The notes under the pieces were generated by a model. That model worked only from the letters and a program-made list of their open reading frames with translations, was not told the DNA's origin and searched no databases. This document shows positions 9,803 through 58,074 of a stretch of 64,000 bases of DNA, in pieces. Both the position numbers and the translations under genes were made by a program. Numbering within the stretch: position 1 is the stretch's first letter; the number at the start of each line of letters is the position of its first letter. Source of the stretch: Podarcis bocagei (taxonomy: Eukaryota); NCBI GenBank assembly GCA_964188305.1, contig OZ076888.1; one strand, 5' to 3'.

Positions 9803-10144
9803 TGGAGATGTCTTCTGGAGATACCTCTGAGTTTGGGGACTCTGTCTCAGATTGAACTGGATCAACTCCAAATATGAATCAAAACAGGGAGATCTGTTTG
9901 TAACTATGACATAAAAGCAATGCTTACTGCGAAGCCTCAAATAATAAAATTTTATTACATCTGGATGAAGCGCATTTAAATTCAAATACCTGAGCCTACG
10001 CCATGTTCCTTGAAAGTAAGATCCATTGGAAATCAATGGGACTGATTTTCAAGTGGCATAGTTAGGACTGTGATGTAAAAATGGTCATATTGCAGCTTGT
10101 CTGCTTACTCCCTTTACCTGGTCTATAACATAACCTGCATACTA

Positions 10145-10367
10145 CAGTGGTACCTCAGGTTACATACACTTCAGGTTACAGACTCCACTAACCCAGAAAT
10201 AGTACCTCAGGTTAAGAACTTTGCTTCAGGATGAGAACAGAAATTGTGCGGCGGTGCAGCAGCAGCAGGAGGTCCCATTAGCTAAAGTGGTGCTTCAGGT
10301 TAAGAACAGTTTCAGGTTAAGAACAGACCTTCAGAACAAATTAAGTACATAACCAGAGGTACCACTG
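10145..10367. mobile_element. Non-autonomous Tc1/mariner (Tigger-like) MITE
   Basis: TIRs CAGTGGTACCTC...GAGGTACCACTG flanked by TA on both sides; homologous inverted copy at 61720-61961. Confidence 0.88.
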
Positions 10368-11207
10368 TAATTGCTCAGCTTCTGTATGGTTTGCATTTTA
10401 ATGTATGGTCCTCTTACATAGCTTTTACACACTTTTGAATTTTAAGAGTAGAATTCTATTACAAACAACTTGTTAAAGGCATAAACACAACGTTCTATCT
10501 TTTCTGTAACTCAGCTTAGATTATTCTGCCTGTTTGGATCTTTATGCTCCCTCCTGCTTACTGTCAGTCTTCTTACCATGGTTAGGCTTAGGGACTAACC
10601 ATCCCATTTTGCCACTGGAAGTGAAATGGGAATGTGCCACTGCCTTTCTTCGGCCATGCCACCCCCCCTTCCACTGCTGCCACAATGCCTCTCCCCTTGC
10701 CACAGCTGCTGAGTGAAGGGGCATTCTGCAATGTGTTCCTGCTCATCTTCTCTGCCCCAGGAAGAGAAAATGAGCGGCACTGTGGCACACCAGAACGCCT
10801 CTCCTCCCTCCAAAATTTGGCGAGAAGGGGATATTCTGCTAGTGGTGGAAGCGATCAGGCAGGCAGGGTGCTGCCTCTGGTTAGGCTAAGAAGATTTTAT
10901 AGAGCAAATGCTATAATGACAAAATTAGATGCTGACAGCTTTGGAACTGCTAATAATTTTGAAAAGCTTTTCTGATAAATTCACCATGCAAAACAAAGTA
11001 AAGCTGCCTCGTTTTCATGCTATTTGGGACACAGGAACTCTGCACTGTAGGACAGAGGTGAAATGCTGGGAGGATATGCCAATGAAGGTGTGTTTCCAGA
11101 TCATTGATCTTAAAAATGTCAATATCCCAGTGCTTGGTGATCCATGTTATAGTGGAAAGAAATTCTGGATTCTTGATTGAAAGGATTTATTGTTATTGTT
11201 ATTACAG

Positions 11208-11281
11208 TGTTCGCCAGCTCTGAGCCTGTACCTGGGTTCCATGGAGAAACCTTACAGTTAGCGTTCATCGACCTCAGACAA
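11208..11281 (+). CDS. EXOC6: EXOC6 internal coding exon
   Basis: ttacAG|TG TTC GCC...AGA CAA|GTaaga; (L)FASSEPVPGFHGETLQLAFIDLRQ; completes the split TTG codon from the previous exon. Confidence 0.96.
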
Positions 11282-14200
11282 GTAAGACATTATTTGTATG
11301 CCTGTTAATGGTCACATTTTACTGAACACCAAGCCTTTGATTCATAGTCCAAGCAACCCTATGTGTTAGCAGATGACATGAAGTCCACTCACACAATGAC
11401 TTGTTGACCCTCCATCCCCGGCTGCATTGCATGCTGCTCTGTAGGTTCGCTAGAGGGTGGCTTGGGAGAAGCAAGATGCCGCTGCAGGAAGCCGGGCTGG
11501 AGAAACCCTGGTGCTTCTGAGCCACATCATCAGATGCTTATGCCATAAATGTGTTTGTTGGCCCCTCATGACTCTTGATTTTGTTGCAACAGACATAACA
11601 CAACTACCCCTCTGACATTTTGGGGAAATTGGGGAAATGACTATCCCACTACTTCACGTGTAACAAAAAAAAAAAGGGTATAGCTATTCAGTTGTCAGGA
11701 TGTGAGGTTGAATTCTAATGTATTTGCAGAGTTGTAAATTTGAATGAAAAGGCTGTTTTAATATATGCTGATCTCATAATGAGTACAATCTTGACGCATA
11801 TTTCTGTGTGGTGCTATGTGAAATAGTTAAGTGGTAAGTAAGTTCAAATGATGGCTTTCGTGTGGGTTTGTTTGTTTTTTTAAACATGTTTAAGGTTAGA
11901 GTTATCATGCATCATCATTAAAAGTAACATTTTATTCTGTAGAATATAATCTCTTGTCAATCTTTTACTTTAGGCTGAAATCATATTTGAGACTGCTTGA
12001 TTCTAGTAGGGCCTTATGAGGAGAGGCGGAAATGAAAATGTAAAAATATATATATAATCCTAATTTACCTTATGTAGGGTGCACCTTTTGCATTTCCTCA
12101 CATCATAGGATTTATAATTTTTATTGTTATTAGTAATCTCTTTTACATAACTAGTCTATCTTTTGCTTTAAAATCATTACCCAATTCATTTTCACAACTA
12201 CCCTGTGAAGGTAGACCATTATGATAAATCCTAGTTTACGTAAGAAAAAGCTGAACTGAGTTGTGTCTCTCCTAAGTATGACATAATATTTTCATTAGGT
12301 TCCCTATATCTGCCATTCAGAGTTCCAGGTGCACCATTATGTATTAAAAGCAGAATGCCTTCCAGGTATTTAAGCAACAACTATTTTAATACAATTTGTT
12401 GCAATCATTTTTGCTTTGCTTCTGAATACAGAACGTAAATGAAGACCAGTCCCTTTTTGTTTTCTTCCTCATCTACTCGCGGCTCATTGCAGTGATGTCA
12501 ATCCTTACAAAGAGCAACATTTAGCTTTTAGTAAGGATTTAACACTCTTCCTCTCCCTTCTATTTATGATCCATTTCTTTCTTAATAGGCCAAATGACAG
12601 TTCTTTTCAAGCATACTTAGAAAGGCAACAGAGCCTTTTTCAGAAAGAGGTCATGCTTCTGTTTTTTAGTTTGAATTCGATACTGTTTCATGAATTGCAG
12701 GATATGAAAGATAAGGAAGTGGGTCCAGTGGTCAGGTTTTACCTGCCCACCCGGACTGTGCCCTGAGGTCAAACTCCTGATATTTGCTGTTTGGTACAGA
12801 GGAGCTGATGACAGGTAGGGGCTGATACAAGGGGGAAAGCTTGAACCATATCAAAGCTAAAAGGCAAGAGAATTGGGACTCAGTGAGAGACTGTAGCTAA
12901 AAGATGGATCAGCAGGGTTGCCCTCTTTTTAAAAAGTAGCTGACCTGTGAGGGAAAAGACTTTATCGTCCTGCCAATCACATGCTTACTAATGGAAGCCA
13001 GTTATCTCAACAACAGCTTACTCTTTTCTGTGTGATTTCATGGCAACGGGCAAGATTAGTAGGAGCGTGGGGTAGCCTTCGCTGGTTATTTCTGACACAA
13101 ATTAATAAACGTAGCACGCACTGCAGTTAACTGTAAAGTTTTGGTGCTTTGAAGACACGTTCAGGGCTGTTTCAGGCTTGATGTAGATAGCACTTCTGCG
13201 TAGGAAATAGCATGAAACAGCTGTGTAGATCAGCATGTATGTGCTGTAACATACATGACTACCTATATCAGCGTTTGCTAACTGGGTGCCCTCCAAGTGT
13301 TTTAGACTACAACTCCTATCAGCACCAGCTAGCACAGCTGACTGACACTGTTGTTTTGCATGCCAATTTGCATGCTATTTTCATTTAGAAATTTTGTCAG
13401 AGTGGACATGGGCCTCATAGTGACTGAAAACTGGGGCAAGCATCCAAAAGTGAAAATGGCTGCCTCTAAAGAACCACATGAAACATGCTCCTCTGCTTTC
13501 AGCAACCTGCTGTAATAATAATTTAACTGTTGCTCCTTATATATTCCTCCATAGCTGATCTAGAACGACTAAAGTGAGAAGTAGAAATTAATTGGTAATT
13601 CCTTATGGAATGACTATAGCAAAATTGATCCAGTTCAAGACATATTCTTGCAGAAATCCACAGATAAAGCCTTCTTGGGCTATTGATTGCAAACTTTTAT
13701 ATATATATATATGCATCCTAAATAAATACTTTGCCCAGAGTTGTTTGTATGGGTGATATTGGATGATGGAAAAATCAATTATTCTTTTCTACAACCAAAT
13801 GATCCTTATTCCTAAGTAAATGTATTTTAGTATCAGGGAGGCAGAAGCAAACACCATTTTGTTCCTGTAGCTATGGTAGAGAGTTTTAAGTGAATTTTTA
13901 TAATGTGAAACTGCACATACTCAATGTCATTAATTTGCCAACTCTGTTTTTTAAAAAGTGTGCTGCTGTCAGGTTTTTTTGTGTTTTATTTTTTGCTGTA
14001 ACAGATTAGGAATGTCAAAGCAGTTGGAAAGCATGAAATGTTGGTTGTGCAGTGGGAGGGAAAAAAATGGTATGCTTCACAACTGGTAACATTCTGGTTA
14101 TCTAAAGGGGGAATCTCTATAAAACCATTAAGTCCAGGGTCTAAAATGATCTAGTGCTGCACAACTCAACCCAGTGCTGACTGACTTGTGATTCATAACT

Positions 14201-14589
14201 TGATGTACAGATGCACAATTCTTTGTTTTTCAAAGCCTGGTTCCTTAAATATCCAAAAGGCTATAGAGCACATTCAATTGATTTGGTAGGCAGGCCTTCG
14301 ATTTTAACAGACTGAAATTCGCAGGAATTGCTTTCCAGGATTGGAAACTGTGATTATGCAAATAGGTGTTAGAAGGAGAAGGCTGGTATAATTGTTGTTG
14401 GTGCCACACAGACACTAAAGCCTAGAGGTTCAGAGCTGGAAGGCCACAAATGGACCTACCTGTGACTGTCAAACTCCTGCTCAACTCAAATGTAAAATAG
14501 TTGACCTAACATTTAAAAAACTGTATATTGTCCCATAGATTGGCCTTCCTACCTGAAGACTGGGAAGTGCCCAAGGTAACAACATGTAA

Positions 14590-15400
14590 AAAAAAGAGGT
14601 GCAGGAAACTTCTGGCAACCAAAATGATTAGGAGACTGAGGCAACTCTTCAGAGATTACAATGGTCAGGACTTTTTAACGTAGAAAAAAGGGAGTAAAAG
14701 GTGAGGGGACATGATAGAAGTTTATGAAGTTATCTGTGGTGTGTAAAAACTGGACAGAAACAAGTTTGCCTCCCTCACAATACTAGAAGCCATTGGCATC
14801 ATCAACTGAAGCTGAAAGATGAGAGAGTGAGGACAAACAAAAGGGAAGTGCTACTTAACATAGTTAAACTGTGGAATTTGCTGTCCCACAAGATGTGATG
14901 GGGATGGATCAACTTTGTTGTTTAGTCGTTTAGTCATGTCTGACTCTTCGTGACCCCATGGACCAGAGCACGCCGGGCACTCCTGTTTCCACTGCCTCCC
15001 GCAGTTTGGTCAAACTCATGCTGGTAGCTTTGAGAACACCATCCAACCATCTCGTCCTCTGTTGTCCCCTTCTCCTTGTGTCCTCCATCTTTCCCAACAT
15101 CAGGGTCTTTTCCAGGGAGTCTTCTCTTCTCATGAGGTGGCCAAAGTATTGGAGCCTCAGCTTCACGATCTGTCCTTCCAGTGAGCACTCAGGGCTGATT
15201 TCCTTAAGAATGGATAGGTTTGCTCTTCTTGCAGTCCATGGGACTCTCAAGAGTCTCCTCCAGCACCATAATTCAAAGGCATCAAATGGTCCAACTTAGT
15301 TCGCTTTAAAAGAGGTTTAGACTAGTTAATGAAGGATAAGGCTATCAATGAAGCAAATGGCCATCACGACACCTCCAATATCACAGGCAGAATGCCTCTC
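14590..15400 (+). mobile_element. Decayed CR1 LINE 3' fragment, interrupted by a Bov-B insertion (boundaries approximate)
   Basis: CR1-type segments ggcaaccaaaatgatt, gacatgatagaagtttat, aaactgtggaattt, then ctttaaaagaggtttagac resuming after the Bov-B piece. Confidence 0.65.
14916..15285 (-). mobile_element. Bov-B (RTE clade LINE) 5'-truncated 3' end
   Basis: Minus-strand ORF 14930-15250 (LRLQYFGHLMRREDSLEKTLMLGKME...RW) is the RTE/Bov-B RT C-terminus; (CAA)-type tail; imperfect TSD ATGGATCAACTT (14904-14915) / ATGGTCCAACTT (15286-15297). Confidence 0.9.
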
Positions 15401-15896
15401 AACAGCGGGAGAAAGCTATTGCCCTCATGCAGTGTTCTTGAGCTTGGCGACTGTGGTAAACCAGATTATGCAGACTCAGGAGATCTCTTCTTATGTTCTT
15501 ACCCATCTGCTGTCCTTCTAGAGTCAGCAGGATTTCCTTAAGTAGCCAGGTATTTGGCATCAAGGACCAATTATTATCCACTTGATCCTACTGGGTTCTA
15601 GAAGCTGTTCAAAACAGCTGCGGTTAAGACCTGTTATCCATTCACTCAGCATGATGTACACTCCTCTTCGGGGTAGCTAATGTGAGAAAAAGGTACAGTG
15701 GCTTTGTGAAATCCAGTCCCAACTGTTTATCAGAGGGCCAAAAGGTTATGAACAAGTGTACATTTTTGTAGGTTCATTCCATCGTGTAATTCTAATGTTG
15801 AATAGAAATATTAACACATGCTGAAACATGCTAAATAGCTCACTGCTTAAGTGTTCACATGCTTGCCAGATACTGTGGACTTTGTACTGATAGTTA

Positions 15897-16040
15897 GTGG
15901 ATAGCTCAGTTGGTTAGATCATGGTGCTGATAACACCAAGGTTGCAGGTTCAATTTCCATATGGATATAACTGCATTGCAGGGGGTTGAACTAGATGATC
16001 TTCAGGCTCCCTTCCAACTCTGCAGTTCTATGATTCTATG
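15897..16040 (+). mobile_element. tRNA-Ile-derived SINE with CR1-like tail (Squam3-like)
   Basis: Head tagctcagttggttagatcatggtgctgataacaccaaggttgcaggttc resembles tRNA-Ile with A/B boxes; ends cccttccaactc...ttctatgattctatg. Confidence 0.8.
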
Positions 16041-17759
16041 TATTGGTTAATGGCTTTGGCTACTGGTTGCTCTGAGGGGGTTTCTGCCTTGGCTTCTAAA
16101 CTTCATGCCCCCCCCCCCACTATTTGCCCATCTTATACTTACACTGATATGCTTGTTTTTCAATTTAAGGAGTAATTTGCTGTCAGATACTGTGCTATAT
16201 ACTTTGCTTAAAGGCACAGAAGATAAGATCAACTCTGTTTCCTTTGTCCAATATAAAGTTTGGTCTCTATTTTTGCATTCTTGCTGACTTGCATCTCATT
16301 GCTCTTCTAATAAGCTTGGGAAGCAGCCTAAATCATAGATACTTCCTGTAATTGGAAGCATTCTAAGCTTACAATTAATGGAACTTGTTCTGTGTAGCTA
16401 GACCCACTTTCAAATAAATCCAGAATAATGTACAAACTAGGAATACTCAACTGAAAGGAGCTGAAAGTTCAAATGACGTAGAAATTATTCCCAGTAAGCT
16501 TAATTTAACTAAGCCAATAATACACCTTAAACTTCTTTTGAGCTCAAATTACTTTAATGAAGGTGTTAATTACTGAGGGATTAACACTACTTCCAAGTGA
16601 TAATGGATGGAGTCCATCAATAGTGGGTTAGAATAATATGGTTTTAGGGAACACAAGAATCTACCAAAGGATTACTTGCCAGGAATGGATGCTATTTCAA
16701 AGTAGAGGCAGGTCATAAGTGATGTGTGTTTTTCCCCTTAATCGCAGCAGGCTTGAATGAGGGAAAGAAATTATCTCTCCATTGTGAGGGCAAAATATTT
16801 CTCTTTTTGGCACAGTTCAACAAAAGCAAAAATAACTGAATTTATCAATTCCTATAGCTTTAGCTGACAGGATGCCAAAGGCGACTCATTCATTAAGTCA
16901 ATATTGGAAAGATATGGGGAAATTAAAATAATCAACTACCTGTATATGGAAGTGTTATTTACATATTTTGAGAATGTACTGCGTAGGGAAGACAGCAGGT
17001 ACAGAGTTCTAGAGTGAAAAGTAGCAATTAAATCTTACAATTTAACCATTTAAAATATATAGCCATTAAGACTGCATGTAAAATGTCAACATTTGTTCAC
17101 TGAATGTATTAATGGAACACAGCCGGTCACAGCTGTGCACCTGAGTGTTCCGTTTGGTTTCTAAAGGTGGAAGCAAAGAGATTCCACGGACCTCTTGCAT
17201 GGTATCTGCAGAGATCCACCCTATCAATATTTGCTGATGACTCTTCTCCAGACAAAGTTCCTATAGTGACAGTGGTTACCAAGTAACTGAACTGCAATTG
17301 TGAGCTGCACAGGAGAAATCCAACCCAACCCAATCATGATAAGATGGAAATCATGTTGGCTGGCAAGCCCTGTTACCTCAGGAGATTGCAGTTCCCCTCA
17401 TACTGGGTCACCTTTCCCTGTCACTCAGGTTCATTGCCTTGGAAGCTTTTGGATCTTAACACTTCACCCGCCTTCTGGAGAGGCTTTCTGTATCTGCCTT
17501 AGATTGTAGGGAGACTACAGTGTGTCAAAACATCTGGTTTCAGTGCTTTGGTATATCAGTCAGCACAAGATGCCTCAGAGGAATTGCCAGGACTTACTAA
17601 ATACCAGATGTGCTGAATCCCTGTTCTTTCTCAAACCACTCGTACTGGGCTTAATGGCCACTGAATTCAATCTAGTGCCAGCTGGCTACTCATGCTATCA
17701 AGTTTTAGTGTTCCTAATTCGAGGTTTGCTATTAGCGGTGCTGGAAAATAACAGTCTCT

Positions 17760-18130
17760 ACTGTCTGCTTATGCTGCTCTACTTACTAAAGTTACTGGAG
17801 TCTCAAGTGACTTCTGTGTGGTTGGGTGTGCTTACGACCAGTTTAGGCTGGTTCACCAGCTATGGCTGTTCATGGACCAGGATAGCGTGTCCCCAGTTGT
17901 CCACATTTTGGTGACCTCCTGTCTGGAGCGCCATAATGTGCTCTGTGTGGGGCAGCTCTTGAAGGCAGCCCAGAGACAGCAGCTAGTTGCAGAACTGTAC
18001 TGTACTGTACTGTAACCTAAAGGGCTCTGGGCCCAAGTTCTTTATAAAGCAGTCTCAACCATCTTGGGCCTTACAATGAGCAAGGAAGGCACTGTTGGTG
18101 GTGTCATCCCTAAGTGCTGCCCATTTGGCA
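17760..18130 (+). mobile_element. Decayed L2 LINE ORF2 fragment (boundaries approximate)
   Basis: ORF 17818-18015 (YDQFRLVHQLWLFMDQDSVSPVVHILVTSCLERHNVLCVG...QLV) resembles the L2 post-RT motif VHALVTSRLDYCN. Confidence 0.65.
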
Positions 18131-21100
18131 TTGGCCTATATCTGTCCTCCTCATTATTAATGTTTAGAAACAACTTACAAACATTCCTGCAATCAAATAG
18201 GTTTGGTCAGAGTGTTAAAAATTTGATACATTGTAGGAACTGCTTCAATAAAACATTGTAGTCTCAAAAGTTGCTTTTTTATTATTACTTTATTTCTTTT
18301 TATTTATATACTGTGTATATGCCCAAATGTCTTCTAAGTGGTTTACAACTATATAATAAAATTGTAATGCTGTTGTCACATTGCAATTCACATGACCACC
18401 AATAGGCCACAGCAACTCCAGTGTGAGGACCAAACATCAGACATTCATGTTGTGAAAGAACCCATTTCTTTCATTAAGTTTTTTACAGGCAAAGTTTTTG
18501 TTGAGTTGTTGGCTGTGTGTGTGTGTGTGTGTGAAACTTTTACAGTGTAAAGCCTATAATGTCTACCTGGAAGTAAGCCCTGTTGAATTCAGTGGGATTT
18601 AGTCCCTGTCAAGTGTCCATACTATTGCAGGCACAATATGCCAAATGAGCATTTGAAGCTTAAACCTGATGTTTTGGGGGCTGGAATCCTATATCTACTT
18701 TTACCTGGGAGTAAATATTGTTGAACTCAATAGGACGTCCTTCTAAGTCAACATGTATAGGATTGCACTGTCTGTGGTTTTCCCAGCAATTTGCTTAAAC
18801 CCCAGTTTGTTACTTTCCCCATTTATTTGTCAAACATAACAGCAAAGGGATATAAATCGTATTAATTAACACAAAATTAAATAAAGATGTGACTTTGCAG
18901 CAACATTTCCCCTCCCCAACAGTTGTGGATTATTGCAACTCTTCTGATGAGTGGGGAGTGAAATATGTTTGGAATTTGTCTATGCACTGTTTTAAACATT
19001 GTGTTGTAAGTTCTGGAAAATGGTGACCTAAAACACTACTAATCCAACCAACTTTTACCTCTAAAATTGTTTTGTTGCTTTGTGCAAAAGGACTCTGTGT
19101 ACAGGCTAACGGGCTACACAGAAACAACTTGTCCAGACCCCTTGCCCTTTGAAAACTGTCTGCCAGACGGCTCCTTTTCAAGCTGTAAACTCAAAAAGAC
19201 AGTTCTTTTGCCACCGGTCCAGCTTATTCTTTAATGATGAGAAAGGAGGCACTACAATTAAACAATGTTTCTTTGTGTTTGTATTCAGGGTTGCTATAGC
19301 ATAAGTGGTGCCTGCCTTACTCGATTTTATCAACCTTGCGACTTTCTATGACCTTTCTTTAGAAAAAAATTATAATGCTTGACTTCTAAAACAGGATTAG
19401 CAAAAGTTGTAGCATCAAAATATTTTCTGGGTAGTCTAGCAGAGCAACCGCCTTGTTTGCACAATTCCTACCTAACATCCTGCATTCTCCCCCACCCCCA
19501 CCCCTTGCATACGGTCCTCAGTTCATTTGAAGTCCTAAGGAATTAGCAGTATATAATATAACAAGACCAGGCATCTCTCAGAATTTACCCCAAGGTCTAG
19601 ATTTAAAGAAAGCACTCTGCCCTTGGGGGGAATTTAGGTTGTTAAGGATTAGTATGAACCCAAATAACTTTTGACTTTTTCAGAGCAGAACAATTCCCTG
19701 TGGTTCAGCTGTCATAACCCCTGAGTTTATGTATTTATATACACTTACAAATGTGTGAGAGATTATATCCCCATTATAGTGACAGCTAATATCTTCACTT
19801 AAGGATGTCAATTTGAAACAGATGTACATATCTTAAAAGGAAAGTAAGGGCAATCTATTGTTAATGTTCAGACTTTATCCTTAATTGCAGTATCTAAATA
19901 GATTTTACTATTGAATTATTATTATTTTTTAAAAATGCATTCCTGCTAATGTGATTGTCCTGTTCTCATATTTATAGCTAATGTACCTCACAGTGTTTAG
20001 TCGATTAGTTTAAGACTCTATTGACACTTAAGATGAAACTACAAAGTCTGATGAAATAAATCTTTGAAAATACATCCCTCCTGATACATTTGACATATCC
20101 CACCCCAATTAACATTGTTTTAGTTGTGCTTTATGCATAGGAACAATTTGTCCTTGTTATAAATTACATATTGTCAGGGAGAATATCTGGATTTTAGTAA
20201 GACTGATGTATCTGAACGTACATAAAGAAACAATGAAGAAACTGGACAGAACACACATACCCCCTTTCTCCCTGTTTCTAAAACATTATCTTCATCATTC
20301 CATAGACTTGTTCCTTTGGAGAGGGAGGGACTCGTTCCTTTTACTCATTTACATTTCTTGCCTGCCCTTCCTTCTAAGGCATGAATGAGGAACCTTTAGC
20401 CCTCCAGATGTTGCTGAACATCCACCAGCCGCAGTAAGTACAGCCATTGGCCAGGGATGATGGGAGTTTGAGTTCAGCAACATATGGAGGACCAGAAGCT
20501 CCCCACACCTGTCATAAGGCAGTCAGGTTAACAGATGTGTTTTTGCGTGGGCAGGCTACCTCAGATTTTCCTCAAGGAGAATGTGAAAATGTACCAGTGG
20601 GGAATATGACTTGGGGAGGTATCCCAAGGGCCAGATAGAGAGGTTTGGAGAGCCAAATCCCCTGGACCTGAGGTTCTGCTCCAGCAGCCATTTCCTCTGA
20701 AATCTGCAGTGACCCAGAGTTTCCAGTGCAGAACAGCAGCTGGAACATCTGAAATCTTATGAATCCCTTTGCCCCTCTCTAGTAACCCTTGTCTGTTTTT
20801 GTTGTCAGATGCCTCAAGAACCTTGGTTAGTAAATGGTATATAAATATTCTGAAACATTTAGCAATCTAAACCTACAGGGCTCAACAGGTAGTTGAAAGA
20901 CTCTTTTAGTTGAGTGCTGCTGATTTCTTTGTTCATTTATTACAGTTTTGAATGGGTTTGTGTTGTGCCATGTTTGAGACAGCGGTAATCCCATATTCAG
21001 TTCTCTGTCAAATTCTGTATGTAATGGCTCTGAAATGTTTTCTGATTAAAGCAAGGATGCTAGTCATATTCGTTGTTGGCCAAAAAATATATAAAATTGT

Positions 21101-37865: not shown

Positions 37866-37978
37866 CTTCTGGATCTCTTCATGGTGTGGGATTGGTCGAC
37901 TTACCTAGCAGACTACGGGCAGCCCAGCTCCAAGTACCTGCGCGTCAATCCAACCACCGCCTTGGCCCTCCTGGAGAA
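37866..37978 (+). CDS. EXOC6: EXOC6 penultimate major coding exon
   Basis: ttcAG|CTT CTG GAT...GAG AA|GTgagt; LLDLFMVWDWSTYLADYGQPSSKYLRVNPTTALALLE(K). Confidence 0.97.
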
Positions 37979-39785: not shown

Positions 39786-39915
39786 AATGAAAGACGTGAA
39801 GAAGAACAACATCTTCGCCCAGTTCAGGAAGAACGACCGCGACAAGCAGAAGCTCATCGAGACGGTGGTGAGGCAGCTGCGAGGCTTGGTGAACGGGATG
39901 TCCCAGCACTCCTGA
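39786..39915 (+). CDS. EXOC6: EXOC6 terminal coding exon
   Basis: ctttcAG|A ATG AAA GAC...; MKDVKKNNIFAQFRKNDRDKQKLIETVVRQLRGLVNGMSQHS*; the VNGMSQH end fits EXOC6 rather than EXOC6B, as does synteny with CYP26C1. Confidence 0.96.
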
Positions 39916-46084: not shown

Positions 46085-46321
46085 ATGCTGCCCAGCCCGA
46101 GCACGAAGATGCTGCCGCCGGTGGCAACCTCTGAGGATGCGCTCTCCTGGCTGGAGGCTGCGCTGGCCACCTGCCTGGCGGTGGCCTTCCTGCTGGCGCT
46201 GGCGCGGCACCTGTGGGCGCTGCGTTGGAGCCTGAGCCGAGACCGCGCCAGCGCCCTGCCACTGCCCAAGGGCTCCATGGGTTGGCCCTTCTTCGGCGAG
46301 ACGCTGCATTGGCTGGTCCAG
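46085..46321 (+). CDS. CYP26C1: CYP26C1 coding exon 1 (alternative in-frame ATG at 46109)
   Basis: Hydrophobic membrane anchor, then LPLPKGSMGWPFFGETLHWLVQ|GTgagc, the CYP26C-type proline hinge. Confidence 0.93.
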
Positions 46322-46565
46322 GTGAGCACTGGGGCGGCGGGCGGGGCAGGGCGGGGCAGGTAAAGGACGAGCCTCCTGGGCTTAGCGCAGCCAGGGCCGC
46401 GGGCGGGGGCTCAGCCCAGAGGCACTCTGCACATGACCAAGGCGCCGAAAAAGAGTTCTAGCGAAGGTGTCCCGCTCAAGGGAAGGTCCTACCGCTAGTC
46501 GCCCATTTCTCAGGATGGGAAAACAAAAGCCCTCGAGCTGGAATGGACGGGGGCTGGGCAAATCA

Positions 46566-46689: not shown

Positions 46690-47081
46690 CGCATTTGCCC
46701 AGCTGTCAGTTCAGTGGGATTTATTCCCAAGCAGGTGCGCCTAAGGCTGTATCACGTTCAGAGGTGTTCCTCAATGCAGGGAGGAAAGCACTTTTGTGAG
46801 GCTCAGAGACACTCTTCACATGTCCCAGGGTTGAAGTTTAGGAATCATAATAAACCGATTCCCCACTCTGAGCCCACTCGGAGGCGACCTCGGGCCGATG
46901 GAGCTCTTTCTGGGGGACTAGGATACGTTTGACACAAAGAAGCAGCTGCGAGGACTCAGCCCCGTGGGGAAAGCGCTCTTCACTACCTCAGAGACACCGT
47001 CGACTTTCTTCGCAAACTGTCCGCGAAGCTTGAGTCCAGGCCTGGGCCTCCATCCCTCTGTTTATCTGACTGGCTGTGCAG

Positions 47082-47306
47082 GGTTCCAGCTTCCACAGCT
47101 CCCGGCGGCAGAGATACGGCGCCGTGTTCAAGACGCACCTACTGGGCAAGCCGGTGATCCGCGTGAGCGGCGCCGACAACGTGCGCAAGATCCTGCTGGG
47201 AGAGCACAGCCTGGTCAGCGCCCAGTGGCCGCTCAGCACCCAGATCCTGCTGGGCTCGCACACCCTCCTCAACGCCAGCGCCGAGGCGCACCGCCAGCGC
47301 AGGAAG
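47082..47306 (+). CDS. CYP26C1: CYP26C1 coding exon 2 (225 nt)
   Basis: gtgcAG|GGT TCC AGC...AGG AAG|GTaggg; [42 protein letters not shown]...HRQRRK. Confidence 0.97.
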
Positions 47307-47700
47307 GTAGGGGGCTGAGGGGCGCGTCGCTGGGGAGGGAAACCTTGGCCGCCGAGCCTGAAACCGAACCTAGGCGCTCTCTGGGAAAGAGAAGGCAGCT
47401 CGCTGGCATTCATCTCCCCCATACAGGTGTTGTTGAGCCCCCACTCCCCACTCAGCTTCAACCAGCACGGCCAATGGTGAGGAACCACGAGAGATGCGGT
47501 CCAGCAATATCTAGGGGTGGGGAGCCCTATAGCTAAAAGCTGGCTGTCGAAGTTTGTGCTAGGCGCTGTCGCAGATTCCAGTAGCCACTCCACGCAAAGG
47601 TTTAGGACCCGCGCCTTACTCAATTCTCTTGGTTGCTGCTAGGACTATACCACTTAGGGCTACTGCTGGTGGCCGGGGTTGCACCCCCCCCCCATTCTTA

Positions 47701-47760: not shown

Positions 47761-48040
47761 TAACTGAACACAGGCAACGTCTCCCAGCTTAGGAAAGTTT
47801 CCCCACCCCATAGCTCAGCATTCAAAAACGCGCAAAGTCCGGGGAAGAATCTCGGCGGTTCCGGTGTTTGTACCGACTGGCCCATTCAAGAGACCAGAAT
47901 AGGGGAAAGAATTGGGGGACTGGTGAAGGGAAAAAATGGGTCTATGGCTTTGGGGCACGATGTCCCTAGTAGCGACCGCTCCCCCAATTAATTTTACATC
48001 GCCCACCGCGGTTCTCTCCCTTCTCTTTTCGCCGCGTCAG

Positions 48041-48316
48041 ATCCTGGTCAGAGTCTTCAGCCGCGCCGCCCTGGAGAGCTACCTGCCCCGCATCCAGAAG
48101 GTGGTGCGCTGGGAGCTGCGCGGCTGGTGCCAGCAGCCGGGCCCCGTCGCCGTCTATTCTTCCGCCAAGACCTTGACCTTCCGCATCGCCGCGCGGATCC
48201 TGCTGGGACTCAGCCTGGAGGAGAAGCAGTTCAAGGAGCTGGCTCGGACCTTTGAGCAGCTGGTGGAGAATCTCTTCTCCTTGCCGCTCAACATCCCCTT
48301 CAGCGGGCTGCGGAAG
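48041..48316 (+). CDS. CYP26C1: CYP26C1 coding exon 3 (276 nt)
   Basis: cgtcAG|ATC CTG GTC...CGG AAG|GTaggg; ILVRVFSRAALESYLPRIQ...NLFSLPLNIPFSGLRK. Confidence 0.97.
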
Positions 48317-50496
48317 GTAGGGCTGCGTGCGCATGTGTGCACGCATCTTCATCGCCATCCAAAGAACCTACTCCGACCATGATCACTTACCCCGATCCAT
48401 TCTGAAGTCCCGCTAATGCCGTTGATGAGCGCAGAATCCTAGAACCCCTGGTCTAAAGTGTGTTTATGGCTGTATCCGTACCCTTTACATCGGATAGACC
48501 TTATTTATTACTATAGTTCACATCTTTCTAGGCCGCCTTTCAAGACTATGGGTGTCCCAAGGCGGCTTTCCTCAATAGCAAGTATTAAAGTGAGTGAAAG
48601 ACCCCTTTCTGGCCTATTTGGGGGTCGGAGGTGGGGTGAGGTTCTGGCTTTGAGCTCTCGGGAGCCCCATCCTCTATTCAGACCAAGCAGCTGGAATAAT
48701 TTTCTGCTGGAAAGGTATTCTGCACCTGCTCAGAGATGCACCTCTTGCGTATTTGTTTGTGTAGGCTATTTTAACCCCCCCTTTCCCCCCAAGCAGGACG
48801 CAATTAAGTTTTATAGCACAAATGAGACAGCAACCAACCTTTAAAGGCACAAAATCCCAATTAAAACAAAATAACTACCTGCCTATTCTAAAGCCTTTGA
48901 AAAGGAAGGGTTTTTTTTTTTTAAAAAATGGATTTAATATTCACCCGCGTTGCAATGTTCTGTTGCACATTGACTCTAATATAGAATGAACGGTGCGAAA
49001 TTCAGTCTGAAAGGTCTGAATTGCCCAAGGTGTCCAGCTGAAAAGGGACAAACTCCGGCATCTGTCGCATCGTGCTGGAACACTGATCGCAACCCTTAGG
49101 GGGCCACCACAAAAAAGGCTCTTTCTGCCTGACAAGCGGCAGAACCGCAAATTGGTTCTCATTCCCAGATCGGAAAGGTCAGGGGGGAGCGCTGCCTGGA
49201 CCTGAGCAGAGCCTTGCATTTAGCCCCCAAACGATTCGGAACCCAGCGGAGCCCATAAAGAACAGGTGCCAGTTCTAACCTGAGCGACAGGCTACTGGGC
49301 AGGCTGAGATCTTTACTGGTCCAGATTCAAAGCCTGGTCGAAGCCACCCGGTTCCTTGCAACCGAGCAGTTTCTGTGGCTTCTGCTCAAGACCTTTATTG
49401 GCTGTGAAGGGATTTTGGCGGCGCACGTGGACGCGGGTCGCGCAGTGCCGGCCACCCCTCCTCTAAAACTAGGTTCCTTTGAATTCAATGCGTCTTGGTC
49501 TCTTTGAATTCACAGGGTCTTACTCCCAGGTAAACAGATATTTATGGCTGTAGCCTAAGGACCCCGTTGAATTCAACAGGACTTACTTCTGAGTAGACCT
49601 GCACCAAGTTTCACTGCTCATTGGGGCTTATTTATTGATTTCCCAGGTCCATAGGATCGCCTAAGGCTCTCTCATCACCCCCCACACCCCCACACCCGAG
49701 CGAGTTTCGTAGAAATCCATTGGGTTCTCCCGACAAGTAAAGCAATAATCCAAAACAGCATTCTTTGAGTTGGAAGCAAATCCCATTTGAACTCTTTCCT
49801 TCGGAGTTAAGACGATCGCATTCGCATTGCACAAAAGGCAGGAACAAGTTGCGTCCTGCGGTGTAAAGGCGTCGTCAATGCAGAGTGCCTTTGTACGGTC
49901 ACGGTGGCTGCCTGGTGGCGGAGGAAAAGGCATTGAGATGTCCTCGAATATCTTCCCCTTTCTCCTTTTTTTGCTTCCAGAAAGTCGTTCATGCCTGATC
50001 CATTTAAACACTGTCTCATCCGTGCTCCCATTGCACCGGCTGCGACGCCTTACGATTTAAGGCTTTAAACGATTCCCTTCCTGGTATAATTTGGGATTGT
50101 TCACACACACGCAAGTCTAGCGCAAGTTTGGGCCAGGTGTGGTGCCATTCATTTGGGTTTTTCTTTAGCAACCAGTGGACTTTCAGGATCTCGGATTCCT
50201 CCACCCCCACCGCTGGAGTTCCTGGCTTCCTCTTATTGTTCACCTTTTCAAAATTTGGCAGCTCAGCGGCTGAAGGCTTTGTAGTCCTCGGGATTTCCTT
50301 TCTCACTGCACTGATTATGGGTTTCGTTGGGCGGGATTGACAGGAACTTTCCCCGTTTCAGCGAAGGAAGAGGATATATTAAGCGCCGCTTCTAATTATA
50401 ATGAGCTCCTACCTGGAGAAGTACGGTAAAAGATTGCCTGAACGTTCCAAGCAATAAGCGACTTCTGACTTCTTCGGCCTCCAAAGGGGCTAGACC

Positions 50497-50537: not shown

Positions 50538-50585
50538 CTGTGCCTTTCTCCTTAGCCATTGCTGTTTTTTCTCTGAACCCTTCAG

Positions 50586-50741
50586 GGAATAAAGGCCAGG
50601 AATCTGCTACACGAGTACATGGAGAAAGCCATCTCGGAGAAACTGAAGCAGAAGGATCCGGAGGCTCACAGCGACGCTCTGGATTTCATTATCAACAGTG
50701 CCAAGGAGCATGGCAAAGAATTTACCATGCAGGAGCTGAAG
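50586..50741 (+). CDS. CYP26C1: CYP26C1 coding exon 4 (156 nt; absent from ORF track in this frame)
   Basis: ttcAG|GGA ATA AAG GCC AGG...GAG CTG AAG|GTaact; GIKARNLLHEYMEKAISEKLKQKDPEAHSDALDFIINSAKEHGKEFTMQELK. Confidence 0.96.
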
Positions 50742-54199: not shown

Positions 54200-54374
54200 G
54201 CTTTCACCAAAACTATCACCTCAACAATTTCTTATGGATGCTCATGTTTTCCAGGCCAGGTTGGAATCAAAAAATGATTCCAGTTACAGATAGGTAGCCG
54301 TGTTGGTCTGCCATAGTCAAAATAAAAAAAATCCCTTCCAGTAGCACCTTAAAGACCAACTAAGTTAGTTCTTG

Positions 54375-54412
54375 GTATGAGCTTTCGTGTGCATGCACAC
54401 TTCTTCAGATAC
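54375..54412 (-). ncRNA. Minimal type-I hammerhead ribozyme motif (Penelope-associated), core intact
   Basis: Reverse complement reads GTAT-CTGAAGA-A-GTGTGCATGCACAC-GAAA-GC-TC-ATAC: stem I GTAT/ATAC, CUGANGA box, palindromic stem II, GAAA box, AGCT palindromic stem III, UC cleavage site. Confidence 0.7.
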
Positions 54413-54607
54413 ACTGAAACAGAAGTTGCCAGACCCTTCTATATAGTGAGAAGGTGGGGAGGGGTATTACTCAGAAGGGTGGTGGGAATGGGCCAATCTC
54501 CCATTCCCACCACCCTTCTGCCAATCTCCCATTCCCACCACCCTTCTGAGTAATACCCCTCCCCACCTTCTCACTATATAGAAGGATCTGGCAACTTCTG
54601 TTTCAGT

Positions 54608-54645
54608 GTATCTGAAGAAGTGTGCATGCACACAAAAGCTCATAC
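54608..54645 (+). ncRNA. Hammerhead ribozyme motif, sense copy with G12>A in the GAAA box (probably inactive)
   Basis: GTAT-CTGAAGA-A-GTGTGCATGCACAC-AAAA-GC-TC-ATAC; A at 54634 where the other arm gives G. Confidence 0.62.
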
Positions 54646-54886
54646 CAAGAACTAACTTAGTTGGTCTTTAAGGTGCTACTGGAAGGAATTTTTTTATCAA
54701 AAAATGATGTGAGTTTTCTGGTTCCCCACAGCTTGAAAACTCTAACAATGTTATATTTGAATTCTAATCACAATGTGTGTGCCTGCCTGACTTTGACGCA
54801 CAAGTGGACTCTGTCTTAAATGGCTTGTGGGTGTCATGCCAAAAAAAGGGGGTATTTAATCTCTCTCCCAATGGCTTATCTTGCAG

Positions 54887-55450
54887 GAGTCTGCGATTGA
54901 ATTGATCTTTGCTGCTTTCTTCACCACTGCCAGTGCTACTACTTCCATGATCCTCCTGTTGCTGAAACACCCCTTGGTCATAAAAAAGATTCAGCAGGAG
55001 CTGGTGTCCCATGATCTCACCGGGCAGTGTCATTGCCTCGCTGCAGGAGATTCTCTGAGAAACCATCAGTCTTGCCCAGAGACTCTGGTCATCCATGGAA
55101 AAGACAACAAAGACAGGGATTCCAATCCGCCTCTTCCTCCCAGGCTGGAAGGAGAAGTAGACAGAGAGACAAAGAGGGAAGTCAGAGTCCCTAAGTTGGG
55201 TCCCATTGCTAGAGCAGCCCAAGGAACTGTCCATGAGACTACAAACTGCCCTTGCTCTGCAGCCAAACAAGAAGAAGCAAACCAAGTCCTTGGCGAGCTG
55301 GAAAGACATGAGCACTATTGTCAGTCTTACTTGACACTGGAGAAGATGAGCCGTCTGCGGTACTTGGATTGCGTCATCAAGGAAGTGCTGCGTTTGCTGC
55401 CCCCAGTGTCCGGAGGCTATAGGACAGCCTTACAAACCTTTGAACTGGAT
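54887..55450 (+). CDS. CYP26C1: CYP26C1 coding exon 5 (564 nt, with long J-K region insertion)
   Basis: ttgcAG|GAG TCT GCG...CTG GAT|GTgagt; I-helix [12 protein letters not shown] (C1-type; B1 has AAYATT, A1 GGHETT) and K-helix KEVLR; open frame throughout. Confidence 0.95.
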
Positions 55451-56332: not shown

Positions 56333-57675
56333 ACCAAAATGAATATGGCCACCCTGGATGTTCATTAGACCAATTAGCAGGATTGCTGCCATTACAAGTA
56401 TTGCAATTGGAGCATCTATTGTGGAGACTAGTAGTTGGCAATGGAAGCTGTGCTTGGAGAATGTTTAAAGATTCATAAGCTGAAGGATTGCTGCAAGTGT
56501 GTTCCCTACAAAGTACTTGATTTAACATTAGGGTTAAAAGGGACCTAACTCTCCATAGCTGCAACAAACTCCTCATAGTTATAATTTTCTAGGTGATTTC
56601 ACCTCAAGCTGTGGCTCACAGAACTACCAAACTGCTCTTTTAATCAGCTCAGATACCATTTCAAGTAAACTTGATTGAAGGCATGAAAGAGGAAATTGCT
56701 CCCTTTACAAAAAAAAACCCCAAAACATTCATGCCAAAGCAATGACCTCTTGTGCAGGACATAGAGTACTAGTCTCATTTATATATTTAAATAAACTCCC
56801 AGAAAAGTGTGGGCTCTGGATCAAGCCTCATCTTGTTGTTGTTATAGCATCAAATAGAAGGTGCCGTCCAGTATGTATTTATTTAGCAAAATGTACATAC
56901 GACTTGATTGTCACAAAACCTCAAAGCAATAAATAGCACAACATGCTTGTTAAGTTGCTTTTGGCTGCCTGCATGTGTGCCGGTAGGAGAGAAAGTGTGA
57001 TAATGTGCATCCGAAAGTTGTACACCCCTTGAAAATTAACATAGGCTGTTGACCCATCTGGTTGGGCTTCAAGCAAAGGTCTTCCCCAGCCCTGCTGCCT
57101 GAAATCACTTTTTAGTTATGCCTCACCGATAATGGGAGCTGTCACACTGCATAAGAATTAAATTATGTGCCAAATATTGTAAGCATTGCTGCCGAGTAGT
57201 CTTTAGGTGCTGTGTCAGCTAGATTTATTCTTGTCTGGCTCTTACACTGTTAGGATTAGCATGCTCTCAAGGTGTTGCAAGACCCACACCCTTCATCAAA
57301 GATAGAGGTCGATGTGGTGGGGGGAAATTAACAGGTTTTCTGTCAAATATTTGTTGCATACCCATTTCTATTCGACTGTTAAACGGGATTTTGAATACTT
57401 CAGTGTACATTCCCTGAAGTTGTAATTCACACATCACTGAAACCATGGTATTTCTGCACCGCCCATTATAGGTCTCTTAACATCTTAATAGGCTTGAGCT
57501 TCTGCTCAAGGGTAATGGTACGGGGGAGTTGAATTTGTGAGGTTTCCTCAAAGATGGGGGTCTGTCCTTGTGGATGCTCTAGTAGAGAAGTCGCTTCCTT
57601 TCTCCTTCCCTCTGCAGGCTGCCCTCTGCAGGTTGCTGTCTCTGGTGCTGATTTTGTTCTGTCTCCCTCCTGCAG

Positions 57676-58074
57676 GGCTGCCAGATTCCCAAGGGCTGGA
57701 GCGTGATGTACAGTATTCGGGACACGCACGAGACCGCCAGCATCTATCAGAGTCCACCAGACATGTTTGACCCCGAGCGGTTTTGGGTGCCACAGGAGGA
57801 ACGGGAAGAGCACAAAGGAGCTGGCCCCGTCCGCTTTCACTATATCCCCTTTGGTGGGGGAGTCCGAAATTGCATAGGCAAAGAACTGGCCCAGATGGTC
57901 CTCAAGTTGCTTGCTATTGAACTGGTCAGCACAGCCCGCTGGGAGCTGGCCACAGCACACTTCCCTAAGATGCAAACGGTGCCTATTGTGCACCCGGTGG
58001 ATGGCTTGCAGCTCTATTTCCATCCTGTGAAGCAGGGAAGAGAAAGCAGCGGAACCAGCAAGACAGAGACTTGA
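57676..58074 (+). CDS. CYP26C1: CYP26C1 coding exon 6 (terminal)
   Basis: cctgcAG|GGC TGC CAG ATT CCC AAG GGC TGG; FDPERF and heme-ligand motif [11 protein letters not shown]; ends ...TET*. Six exons total 1857 nt = 618 aa + stop. Confidence 0.97.

What the first reader, a model, noticed from the sequence alone, without database searches (positions are those of the whole stretch)
54375..54645. Mirror pair of hammerhead ribozymes in CYP26C1 intron 4: antisense copy intact, sense copy mutated at catalytic G12
Seen: each arm of the fold-back has GTAT-CTGAAGA-A-GTGTGCATGCACAC-[G/A]AAA-GC-TC-ATAC. The minus-strand copy (54375-54412) keeps GAAA. The copy transcribed in CYP26C1 pre-mRNA (54608-54645) reads AAAA (A54634). 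Known: Penelope-like elements carry minimal type-I hammerheads that lack a monomeric stem III and are thought to cleave as dimers via a short palindrome (here AGCT); G12 is the general base. Inference: one of only three arm substitutions disables the copy able to cut the mRNA precursor of a retinoic-acid-degrading developmental gene. That could be selection, while the intact copy could cut antisense RNA. Caveats: the site is a CpG, so neutral decay is an equally good explanation, and each strand has one copy, so cleavage would need an intermolecular dimer.
Basis: partly seen in the sequence, partly recalled or inferred. Interest (0 to 1): 0.72.

Follow-up and report, generated by a model that had tools for sequence, protein, structure and literature searches.

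The report
Ordinary Penelope fold-back with hammerhead motifs
This is one ordinary young copy of a very abundant lizard jumping gene (a Penelope-like element) inserted as a hairpin in an intron of CYP26C1; each arm carries the element's small ribozyme motif, and the one "disabling" change is best explained by ordinary mutation at the arm's only CpG, not by selection to protect the gene.

Summary
Two 168-nt inverted arms differ at three sites. Each arm carries a 38-nt minimal type-I hammerhead motif. The minus-strand copy is complete and the plus-strand copy has A instead of G12 at 54634. The host is a CYP26C1 orthologue on the + strand, and the insert lies in intron 4, 184 nt before exon 5.

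The structure is a single Penelope-like element (PLE) insertion. It has a 13-bp target-site duplication, two head-to-head 5'-truncated copies and a 46-nt "tail" at one end only. This is the published PLE insertion layout, and mirror pairs of minimal hammerheads were already described in 2014.

The selection idea is not supported:
- G12 sits in the only CpG of the arm.
- About 15-22% of the family's k-mer mass in three related lizards already reads A there.
- A core hit in the sense arm is expected by chance about 24% of the time.
- Neither ribozyme is likely to act here. The pre-mRNA has no partner copy, and each motif is locked in a hairpin of about -320 kcal/mol.
- Family RNA reads show no ends at the cut sites. 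They do show ADAR-like A>G changes, as expected of double-stranded RNA.

The scan has already noted this repeat family many times elsewhere in this genome. Interest is low.

The parts
54266..54278 (.). Left copy of the 13-bp target-site duplication (ATCAAAAAATGAT), an A/T-rich target.
   Evidence: It is identical to 54696-54708. Contigs from other family copies lose their match just here, with loose ends at 54278/54282 whose consensus agreement is low.
54279..54324 (-). 46-nt 3' 'tail' of the left (inverted) PLE copy. It is present at this end of the insertion only.
   Evidence: The alignment of the two arms runs on here for the left copy only, and the sequence was read. The family loose-end consensus after 54697 continues with the same tail in other copies. 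A 30-40-bp tail at one end is a described PLE trait (PMC8557442; PMC11167929).
54325..54492 (-). Left arm: a 5'-truncated PLE copy whose sense is on the minus strand.
54375..54412 (-). Complete minimal type-I hammerhead motif. G12 is the complement of C54386, and the predicted cut lies between 54379 and 54378.
   Evidence: The features were compared with PMC4209133.
54493..54527 (+). Centre of the fold-back. A 28-nt unit (54493-54520) is repeated in tandem at 54521-54548, a complex junction between the two copies.
   Evidence: Read directly. The alternative pairing I2 appears. Family loose ends at 54517-54520 show that the element sequence proper continues upstream of the right arm.
54528..54695 (+). 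Right arm: a 5'-truncated PLE copy whose sense is on the plus strand, and which lacks the tail.
54608..54645 (+). The same hammerhead motif in the sense of the CYP26C1 pre-mRNA, with A at position 12 (54634). The cut would lie between 54641 and 54642.
   Evidence: The descriptor fails on it only at the GAAA box.
54634..54634 (+). G12>A, a CpG-to-CpA transition. In the + strand RNA hairpin it lies opposite C54386 as an A-C mismatch.
   Evidence: The family majority here is G, and the A share is about 15-22%.
54696..54708 (.). Right copy of the target-site duplication.
50583..50741 (+). CYP26C1 exon 4 (approximate, from the tblastn match).
54881..55450 (+). CYP26C1 exon 5 (approximate). It begins 184 nt after the right arm ends.

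Best explanation
This is a single, fairly young insertion of a very abundant lacertid Penelope-like element (PLE). It spans 54279-54695 and is flanked by a 13-bp target-site duplication.

Inferred origin: the PLE enzyme nicked both strands of an A/T-rich site and primed reverse transcription from both. That produced two 5'-truncated cDNA copies that meet head to head, one started at the outer RT start site (with the tail) and one at the inner site (without it). Each copy carries the element's minimal hammerhead, which overlaps the start of the element's ORF, so a mirror pair of motifs is an automatic by-product.

The G12>A difference is a neutral change. Most likely it is post-insertion deamination at the arm's only CpG. 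Less likely it was already in the RNA template of the right arm.

At this locus neither motif works as a ribozyme. Every transcript that contains one also contains its perfect complement just upstream, so it folds into a 168-bp hairpin. There is also no second same-sense copy to provide the dimeric helix III that these minimal hammerheads need. The most likely fate of the intronic RNA is that of any long inverted repeat, namely ADAR editing and decay with the intron.

Shown here: the anatomy, the family abundance, the CpG context, the folding energies and the editing-like signal at family level. Inferred: the double-priming origin, and the absence of cleavage at this particular locus.
For: Anatomy:
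- The arms, the target-site duplication, the one-sided tail and the central junction.
- The anole Poseidon enzyme cleaves and extends both DNA strands, prefers A/T-rich sites, and starts reverse transcription at two internal sites 111-118 nt into the ORF. The stretch between the two sites is the tail (PMC11167929). Here the distance from the ATG in loop II (54394 on the minus strand) to the tail end (54279) is 116 nt.

Motif:
- All descriptor-independent traits of the PLE min-HHR are present.
- Pairs of min-HHRs 100-700 bp apart on opposite strands were already reported.

Family:
- 10,000-20,000 contigs per run lay on the arms, with summed word depth of 1-3 million against about 6-32 on unique flanks, in three other lizard organisms.
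- The scan holds 123 notes on such elements in this genome.

Neutrality:
- The arm has a single CpG and the window's CpG observed/expected ratio is 0.40.
- The A12 share is 14.8%, 22.2% and 20.2% in the three runs, from depths at 54634/54641 against 54379.
- The chance estimate for a core hit in the sense arm is 0.24.

No activity expected or seen:
- Hairpin MFE is -318 to -337 kcal/mol. Releasing the 38 nt costs 71-75 kcal/mol, and the local fold returns only 6-7.
- The isolated motifs fold no better than shuffles.
- No other min-HHR exists in the window.
- Min-HHR monomers are inactive and dimers are weak in vitro. The anole HHR needs the PLE protein and leaves no RNA-seq ends at its cut site.
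- In RNA run X24 no pile of read starts or ends appears at 54641/54642 or 54378/54379, at depths of 125-235.
- Strand-specific A>G and T>C changes that are absent from DNA indicate that family transcripts are double-stranded in vivo.
Against: - With only one locus, selection cannot be formally excluded. An unverified scan note reports a second palindrome whose only mismatch hits G12 on the gene-sense strand (s1-337840).
- The RNA evidence comes from one run of a related species, and its reads derive from many family copies. No RNA read covered the unique flanks or exon 5, so nothing is known about this locus's own transcript.
- Ordinary RNA-seq is a weak detector of ribozyme ends.
- The complementary CpG product (C11.1>U) does not appear among the variant rows shown, and 14 rows were hidden. 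A12 may therefore be a subfamily marker rather than recurrent decay.
- The presence or state of the insertion in sister species could not be read, because their contigs did not cover the flanks.
- No reverse-transcriptase ORF was examined here. The link of this repeat to an autonomous PLE rests on its architecture and on an unverified scan note (s1-340143).
Confidence: 0.85

Rival explanations
1. The sense-strand hammerhead would cut the CYP26C1 pre-mRNA, so selection favoured the G12>A allele. The intact copy remains free to cut antisense RNA.
For: G12A is a strongly disabling change, and it lies in the gene-sense arm. One other unverified scan note describes the same pattern in a GPM6A intron. 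A preprint reports that tandem retrozymes are under-represented in introns of Xenopus.
Against: - The change is at the sole CpG of the arm.
- The family-wide A12 share is 15-22%.
- The chance probability of a core hit in the sense arm is about 0.24.
- The pre-mRNA has one sense copy and no partner anywhere in the 64 kb.
- The AGCU contact is worth only -2.5 to -3.9 kcal/mol.
- The motif is masked by a 168-bp duplex.
- Min-HHR monomers are inactive in vitro.
- Other unverified scan notes list intact sense-strand copies in introns of VXN, SUSD4 and PAXBP1. Two A12 cases among roughly nine flagged sense copies equals the family base rate.
Confidence: 0.03
2. The A at 54634 was never a mutation of this locus. 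The two arms were copied from two different RNA molecules, or one arm acquired reverse-transcriptase or editing errors, so the three differences date from the insertion itself.
For: - The PLE enzyme extends both strands independently.
- A12 copies make up 15-22% of the family, while the reciprocal CpG product is not among the listed variants, which hints at an amplifying A12 subfamily.
- In the element's ORF frame the change is synonymous (ACG>ACA, read).
- Hammerhead-dead mutants of the anole element still insert in vitro.
- All three differences are G in the left copy against A in the right, and at two of them the left copy holds the rare state.
Against: Only three differences in 168 nt, and no further subfamily-diagnostic differences between the arms. 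Hidden rows may contain the reciprocal variant. No outgroup locus is available.
Confidence: 0.2
3. The hairpin itself has been taken up by the host, as a precursor of small RNAs or as a structure that modulates splicing of exon 5, which begins 184 nt downstream.
For: The hairpin is very stable. There are sub-threshold matches to many miRNA-precursor models. The family shows an editing-like signal at the RNA level.
Against: All miRNA matches fall far below their gathering scores (49 against 85 bits at best). They hit many unrelated families on both strands, which is what any long hairpin does. The element is one of tens of thousands of similar copies. No RNA reads were found at this locus.
Confidence: 0.04

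Closest known systems
Minimal hammerhead ribozymes (min-HHR) of metazoan Penelope-like elements (Cervera & de la Pena 2014, PMC4209133)
   Same: [quoted passage not shown] Helix II is long, helix I has 4 bp, and there is no helix III but a palindromic 15.1-16.1 (AGCU). The cleavage dinucleotide is UC. Copies are scattered, with pairs on opposite strands 100-700 bp apart. The paper reports similar motifs in reptiles (turtle, snakes).
   Different: The helix II sequence is specific to this lacertid family and is itself a 14-nt palindrome containing an ATG. The + copy fails the GAAA box. Activity was not tested.
Poseidon_Ac (PAc) of Anolis carolinensis (PMC11167929)
   Same: It is a squamate PLE whose ORF begins inside the hammerhead. 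Its hammerhead is minimal, with a 4-nt palindrome in place of helix III (ACGU there, AGCU here, by eye). Reverse transcription starts about 111-118 nt into the ORF (116 nt here), there is an optional tail, the target is A/T-rich, and both DNA strands are used.
   Different: The hammerhead sequence differs throughout, and no similarity was evident by eye. In PAc the ATG lies at A9/10.1 and the cut site is 26 nt downstream. Here the ATG is in loop II and the cut site is 16 nt downstream. This copy is a short fragment of about 170-214 nt per arm without an RT.
Canonical PLE insertion architecture: inverted 5'-truncated copy plus a one-sided tail (Craig et al. 2021, PMC8557442; Evgen'ev & Arkhipova 2005, cited there)
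   Same: Head-to-head 5'-truncated copies, a 30-40-bp tail at one end only, and a target-site duplication.
   Different: No full-length unit lies between the repeats. The two truncated copies abut directly, with a 28-nt tandem duplication at the joint.
Conserved intronic hammerheads of amniotes (HH9, HH10; de la Pena & Garcia-Robles 2010; recalled from memory, Rfam RF02275/RF02277)
   Same: A type-I hammerhead in the sense strand of a vertebrate intron.
   Different: Those are complete three-helix ribozymes, conserved across species, recognised by Rfam models and active as monomers. This one has no helix III, gets no Rfam match, is a young repeat copy, and is mutated at G12.
ADAR-edited inverted-repeat retroelements in introns (for example primate inverted Alu pairs; from general knowledge)
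   Same: A long intramolecular dsRNA formed by two inverted copies of a repeat. The family RNA reads show strand-specific A>G changes.
   Different: Here a single insertion event makes both arms. Editing was seen only at family level, in one run of a related species, without matched DNA.

Membership tests
PLE minimal hammerhead (min-HHR, PMC4209133) | Catalytic boxes C3-U4-G5-A6-N7-G8-A9 and G12-A13-A14(-A15.1). | tested here: met
   The minus copy has both boxes. The plus copy has CUGAAGA but AAAA in place of GAAA, so that copy does not meet the feature.
PLE minimal hammerhead (min-HHR, PMC4209133) | [quoted passage not shown] | tested here: met
   An A follows CUGAAGA, and helix II opens with G...C.
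PLE minimal hammerhead (min-HHR, PMC4209133) | A long helix II (6-8 bp) and a short helix I (4-5 bp). | tested here: met
   GUGUG(C)/(G)CACAC gives 5-6 bp (7 counted with the loop-closing pairs by my descriptor). GUAU/AUAC gives 4 bp.
PLE minimal hammerhead (min-HHR, PMC4209133) | No monomeric helix III. Positions 15.2-16.2 are palindromic, so two copies can build helix III, and the cleavage site is U16.1-H17. | tested here: met
   A-GC-U is the palindrome AGCU and it is followed by C17. The duplex is worth only -2.5 to -3.9 kcal/mol.
PLE minimal hammerhead (min-HHR, PMC4209133) | Self-cleavage as a dimer or with the PLE protein. | not testable with these tools
   The only indirect evidence is that family RNA reads show no pile of read ends at the predicted sites.
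PLE minimal hammerhead (min-HHR, PMC4209133) | Location in the pseudo-LTR of a PLE that encodes RT and a GIY-YIG endonuclease. | tested here: inconclusive
   The insertion architecture is PLE-like. No RT ORF belongs to this truncated copy. The link to an intact element in this genome is an unverified scan note (s1-340143).
Rfam hammerhead families (Hammerhead_1, Hammerhead_3, Hammerhead_II, HH9, HH10) | A score at or above the gathering threshold of the covariance model. | tested here: not met
   No hammerhead match at gathering on the whole window. None at E<=10 on 501 nt or on the isolated 66 nt holding the intact motif. This is expected, because these models require helix III.
PLE insertion (Penelope/Poseidon type) | A target-site duplication at an A/T-rich site. 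| tested here: met
   A 13-bp exact duplication with 10 of 13 positions A/T.
PLE insertion (Penelope/Poseidon type) | 5' truncation with an adjacent inverted 5'-truncated copy, and a 30-40-bp tail at one end only. | tested here: met
   The copies are 54279-54492 (minus sense) and about 54521-54695 (plus sense). A 46-nt tail is present on the left only, which matches PMC8557442.
microRNA precursor families hit in Rfam (MIR2118, MIR6462, mir-337 and others) | A score at or above the gathering threshold. | tested here: not met
   The best score is 49.4 bits against a threshold of 85. About 50 unrelated families match on both strands, which is a generic hairpin effect.

The most novel reading that the evidence does not exclude
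Gene-sense intronic copies of this PLE family lose hammerhead core residues, G12 above all, more often than antisense or intergenic copies of equal age. This locus and the GPM6A palindrome noted by the scan would be two examples. That would mean these minimal hammerheads do cut host pre-mRNAs in vivo and are purged by selection.

A more exotic side variant: the A12 in the + strand hairpin lies opposite C as an A-C mismatch, a favoured ADAR context, so editing to inosine could give back a G-like base at position 12.
Probability: 0.04. Interest if true: 0.6.

Novelty: new member of a known kind. Interest (0 to 1): 0.12.

Why it matters
It matters little. The locus is one of tens of thousands of copies of a repeat whose architecture and ribozyme motif are already published, and the apparent "protective" mutation is what CpG decay predicts.

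Its use is as a clean, fully annotated example of three things: how a PLE makes a mirror pair of hammerheads in one insertion event, why such pairs mask themselves as dsRNA, and why a single G12 hit should not be read as selection. The family-level editing signal and the 15-22% A12 share give base rates for judging the many similar findings in this genome.

Tried and rejected
- **Rfam covariance models.** No hammerhead match appeared at gathering, at E<=10 on 501 nt, or on the isolated intact motif. The models require helix III, so this does not count against a min-HHR. A descriptor search was used instead.
- **The miRNA-precursor matches.** Rejected as a generic hairpin artefact.
- **Exact-pattern scan of metagenome contigs for the 34-nt motif, to find full-length relatives.** It gave 0 matches.
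- **Lunse, Weinberg & Breaker 2017 (PLE hammerheads cleave as dimers).** The paper is not held and is cited only through a review.
- **The search of earlier findings by sequence.** Blank, which means nothing according to the operators.
- **Dating the insertion and the G12>A change from the orthologous locus in organisms B, E and F.** This failed. Their contigs covered the repeat massively but not the unique flanks next to it, and no empty-site joint was among the rows shown.
- **Locus-specific expression.** No RNA read lay on the flanks or exon 5 in run X24.
- **The joints listed (about 54412 to 54608).** They hint that many family palindromes are centred at the first base of helix I. Their sides are only 19-35 letters and an 18-nt local inverted repeat lies there, so I do not rely on them.
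- **Two-strand cofolding of the intact motif.** It predicts an extended duplex through the palindromic helix II (-30.6 kcal/mol) rather than the hammerhead dimer. I note it as a competitor fold and make no claim about it.

Full report
**Observation.**
The repeat finder gives one long inverted repeat, with arms at 54325-54492 and 54528-54695. It is 168 nt long, 98% complementary, and has 35 nt between the arms. Aligning the reverse complement of the left arm with the right arm shows three differences, at 54434/54586, 54386/54634 and 54333/54687.

Both arms contain GUAU-CUGAAGA-A-GUGUGCAUGCACAC-[G/A]AAA-GC-UC-AUAC. The minus-strand copy (54412 down to 54375) has GAAA. The plus-strand copy (54608-54645) has AAAA because of A54634. 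The 28-nt core occurs nowhere else in the 64 kb and is not expected by chance (0 in 100 shuffles). A structural descriptor for minimal hammerheads that I wrote finds exactly one complete motif in the window, the minus copy, and none in 100 shuffled windows.

**Gene context.**
The last P450 exon (heme-binding FGGGxRxCxG motif) was searched against 1.8 billion representatives. Its best full-length hits are named cytochrome P450 26C1 by their sources. In tblastn against the window those two proteins match the last exon at 74-76% identity, against 46% for a gecko CYP26A1.

tblastn of the CYP26C1 proteins on the window gives six + strand exons at about 46109-46327, 47076-47309, 48035-48352, 50583-50741, 54881-55450 and 57670-58062. 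The insert therefore lies in intron 4, 184 nt upstream of exon 5, and the + strand copy is the one in the pre-mRNA sense. I searched exon by exon and did not build a joined model.

**What the structure is.**
An exact 13-bp direct repeat, ATCAAAAAATGAT, flanks the whole unit at 54266-54278 and 54696-54708. Both arms therefore arrived in one insertion event. The two copies are head to head, with their 5'-truncated ends in the centre and their 3' ends pointing outward. The left copy runs 46 nt further at its 3' end (54279-54324) than the right copy. At the centre a 28-nt unit is duplicated in tandem (54493-54520 and 54521-54548, read).

This is the published layout of Penelope-like element insertions. 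[quoted passage not shown]

The biochemistry of the anole element Poseidon_Ac offers a mechanism. The protein cleaves and extends both DNA strands, prefers A/T-rich targets, and starts reverse transcription at two internal sites 111-118 nt into the ORF. The tail is the stretch between those two sites (PMC11167929). Here the ATG in loop II of the hammerhead lies 116 nt from the tailed end. That the two arms arose by priming on both strands is my inference and is not shown.

**The motif.**
Cervera and de la Pena defined the PLE min-HHR by the two catalytic boxes. After their searches they listed traits that were not in their descriptor. [quoted passage not shown] All of these are present here.

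They also reported pairs of min-HHRs 100-700 bp apart on opposite strands, and similar motifs in reptiles.

The Rfam hammerhead models do not see the motif at any threshold. This is expected, because the models require helix III. It does mean the motif is not a member of those Rfam families.

The anole Poseidon hammerhead has the same plan, with ACGU where this one has AGCU, but a different sequence.

**Family abundance and the state of position 12.**
Logan contigs of three other lizard organisms (coded B, E, F) lay on the arms in huge numbers. There were 10,541 to 20,204 contigs per run, with summed word depth of 1-3 million, against about 6-32 on the few unique stretches covered. The tool warns that this is not a copy number. 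Even so, the family clearly has on the order of 10^4-10^5 copies. The scan's notebook holds 123 notes on Penelope hammerheads in this genome, which it calls a lacertid lizard.

Short contigs are laid on whichever arm they match best. The split of depth between mirror positions therefore estimates variant shares. Around position 12 the right arm (A) receives 228,750, 725,029 and 806,208 in the three runs, and the left arm (G) receives about 1.31, 2.54 and 3.18 million. That gives an A12 share of about 15%, 22% and 20%.

At the other two differences the right arm holds the majority state, and the left arm holds a minority G. So the left copy carries two A>G changes and the right copy one G>A change.

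**Is selection needed?**
The shared arm contains a single CpG, formed by C11.1 and G12. The window is CpG-depleted, with an observed/expected ratio of 0.40. With a tenfold CpG rate, the chance that at least one of three substitutions hits G12 is about 0.15. The chance that one hits any core nucleotide of the sense arm is about 0.24.

G12A is indeed strongly disabling, from more than 500-fold to about 10^5-10^6-fold slower (PMC2553840). But a fifth of the family already has it.

The scan's unverified notes list one more palindrome with its only mismatch at G12 on the gene-sense strand (GPM6A). They also list several intact sense-strand intronic copies, namely a perfect hairpin in VXN, three sense copies in SUSD4, and one in PAXBP1. 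Two in roughly nine is the base rate. These notes are leads and are not evidence.

**Could either copy act here?**
A transcript of either strand that includes a hammerhead also includes its exact complement, and that complement is transcribed first. The predicted fold is one long hairpin, at -318 kcal/mol for 54300-54720 (z = -38) and -326 and -337 kcal/mol for the two strands of 54279-54708. Forcing the 38 nt out of the duplex costs 71-75 kcal/mol, and the local hammerhead-like fold returns only 6-7.

The isolated 56-nt motifs fold no better than shuffles, and an upstream UUUCAG can pair with the CUGAAG box.

Each transcript has one sense copy, and no other min-HHR exists in the 64 kb. The intermolecular AGCU helix is worth about -2.5 to -3.9 kcal/mol.

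In vitro, a min-HHR monomer was inactive, and dimers or trimers cleaved weakly. The anole hammerhead cleaved only when the PLE protein was present, was dispensable for insertion, and left no RNA-seq ends at its cut site.

**RNA evidence.**
In raw reads of one RNA-seq run of organism F (X24), 1,260 reads lay on the arms. 91% of what was laid ran on into unlike sequence, so the reads come from other family copies. None lay on the unique flanks or exon 5, so nothing can be said about this locus's own transcript.

No pile of molecule starts or ends was reported at 54641/54642 or 54378/54379, at depths of 125-235. The only pile was 12 starts at 54593.

RNA variants are dominated by A>G and T>C, which account for 26 of 46 places against 9 of 23 in DNA of the same species. 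They are strand-specific:
- A>G in reads whose first mate is on the minus strand (54367 42/233, 54377 37/235, 54659 40/91, 54670 41/111).
- T>C in reads whose first mate is on the plus strand (54350 33/247, 54361 46/237).
- All of these are near zero in DNA contigs.

With a dUTP-type library this is the signature of A-to-I editing on both RNA strands. It means the family's transcripts are double-stranded in vivo. This supports the masking argument at family level. It still needs matched DNA from the same individual.

**Open point.**
If A12 arose only by recurrent CpG decay, the reciprocal product (C11.1>U, 54387 G>A or 54633 C>T) should be about as common. It is not among the rows shown, but 14 rows were hidden.

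A12 may therefore mark an amplifying subfamily, and the right arm may have been copied from an A12 RNA. In the element's own reading frame, which starts at the ATG in loop II, the change is synonymous (ACG to ACA). Both origins are neutral with respect to CYP26C1.

**Verdict.**
The identification as a mirror pair of PLE minimal hammerheads in CYP26C1 intron 4 is supported. The selective reading is not supported. The feature is an ordinary copy of a known kind of element, and the same family has been noted many times elsewhere in this genome by the scan.

Noticed in passing
window 54340-54380 and 54645-54675 (RNA reads of the family, run X24): Strand-specific A>G and T>C changes at 15-45% of RNA reads, absent from DNA contigs of three species. 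This is an ADAR-like editing signature on transcripts of this Penelope hairpin family, in both orientations.
   Followed up: partly
window 54434/54586, 54386/54634, 54333/54687: All three arm differences are G in the left copy (element sense) against A in the right copy. Family depths indicate that the left copy holds the rare state at two sites and the right copy at one. With three sites this may be chance, editing of a template RNA, or two different templates.
   Followed up: partly
window 54626-54655 (+), mirrored on the minus strand in the left arm: An ATG sits in loop II of the hammerhead, as in the anole Poseidon element, where the ORF starts inside the ribozyme. In this copy the frame stops after nine codons (54653-54655), whereas a large share of the family's k-mer mass reads a sense codon there. 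This suggests ORF-bearing and non-coding subfamilies.
   Followed up: no
window 54493-54548: A 28-nt tandem duplication lies at the joint between the two inverted copies. Family contigs show that the element sequence continues upstream of 54518-54521 in other copies, so the joint looks like a template-switch scar.
   Followed up: partly
window 54391-54416 joined to 54602-54609 (joints): Many contigs of other family copies appear to join the two arms directly at the first base of helix I, as shorter palindromes centred there. Their sides are short (19-35 nt) and a local inverted repeat (UUUCAG/CUGAAG) could mimic this.
   Followed up: no
window 54608-54645 (either arm): Helix II (14 nt) is itself a perfect palindrome, and helix I strands are mutually complementary between molecules. 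Two copies are therefore predicted to form an extended duplex (-30.6 kcal/mol) rather than the AGCU-mediated hammerhead dimer.
   Followed up: partly
window 37881-37976 and 39787-39888 (+): One database protein (P0001, 642 aa) joins two short upstream matches here to CYP26C1 exons. This is probably a mis-predicted fusion model or an upstream gene's exons. It was not examined.
   Followed up: no
window 2995-3206 and 9654-9802: Two runs of N (assembly gaps or masked stretches).
   Followed up: no
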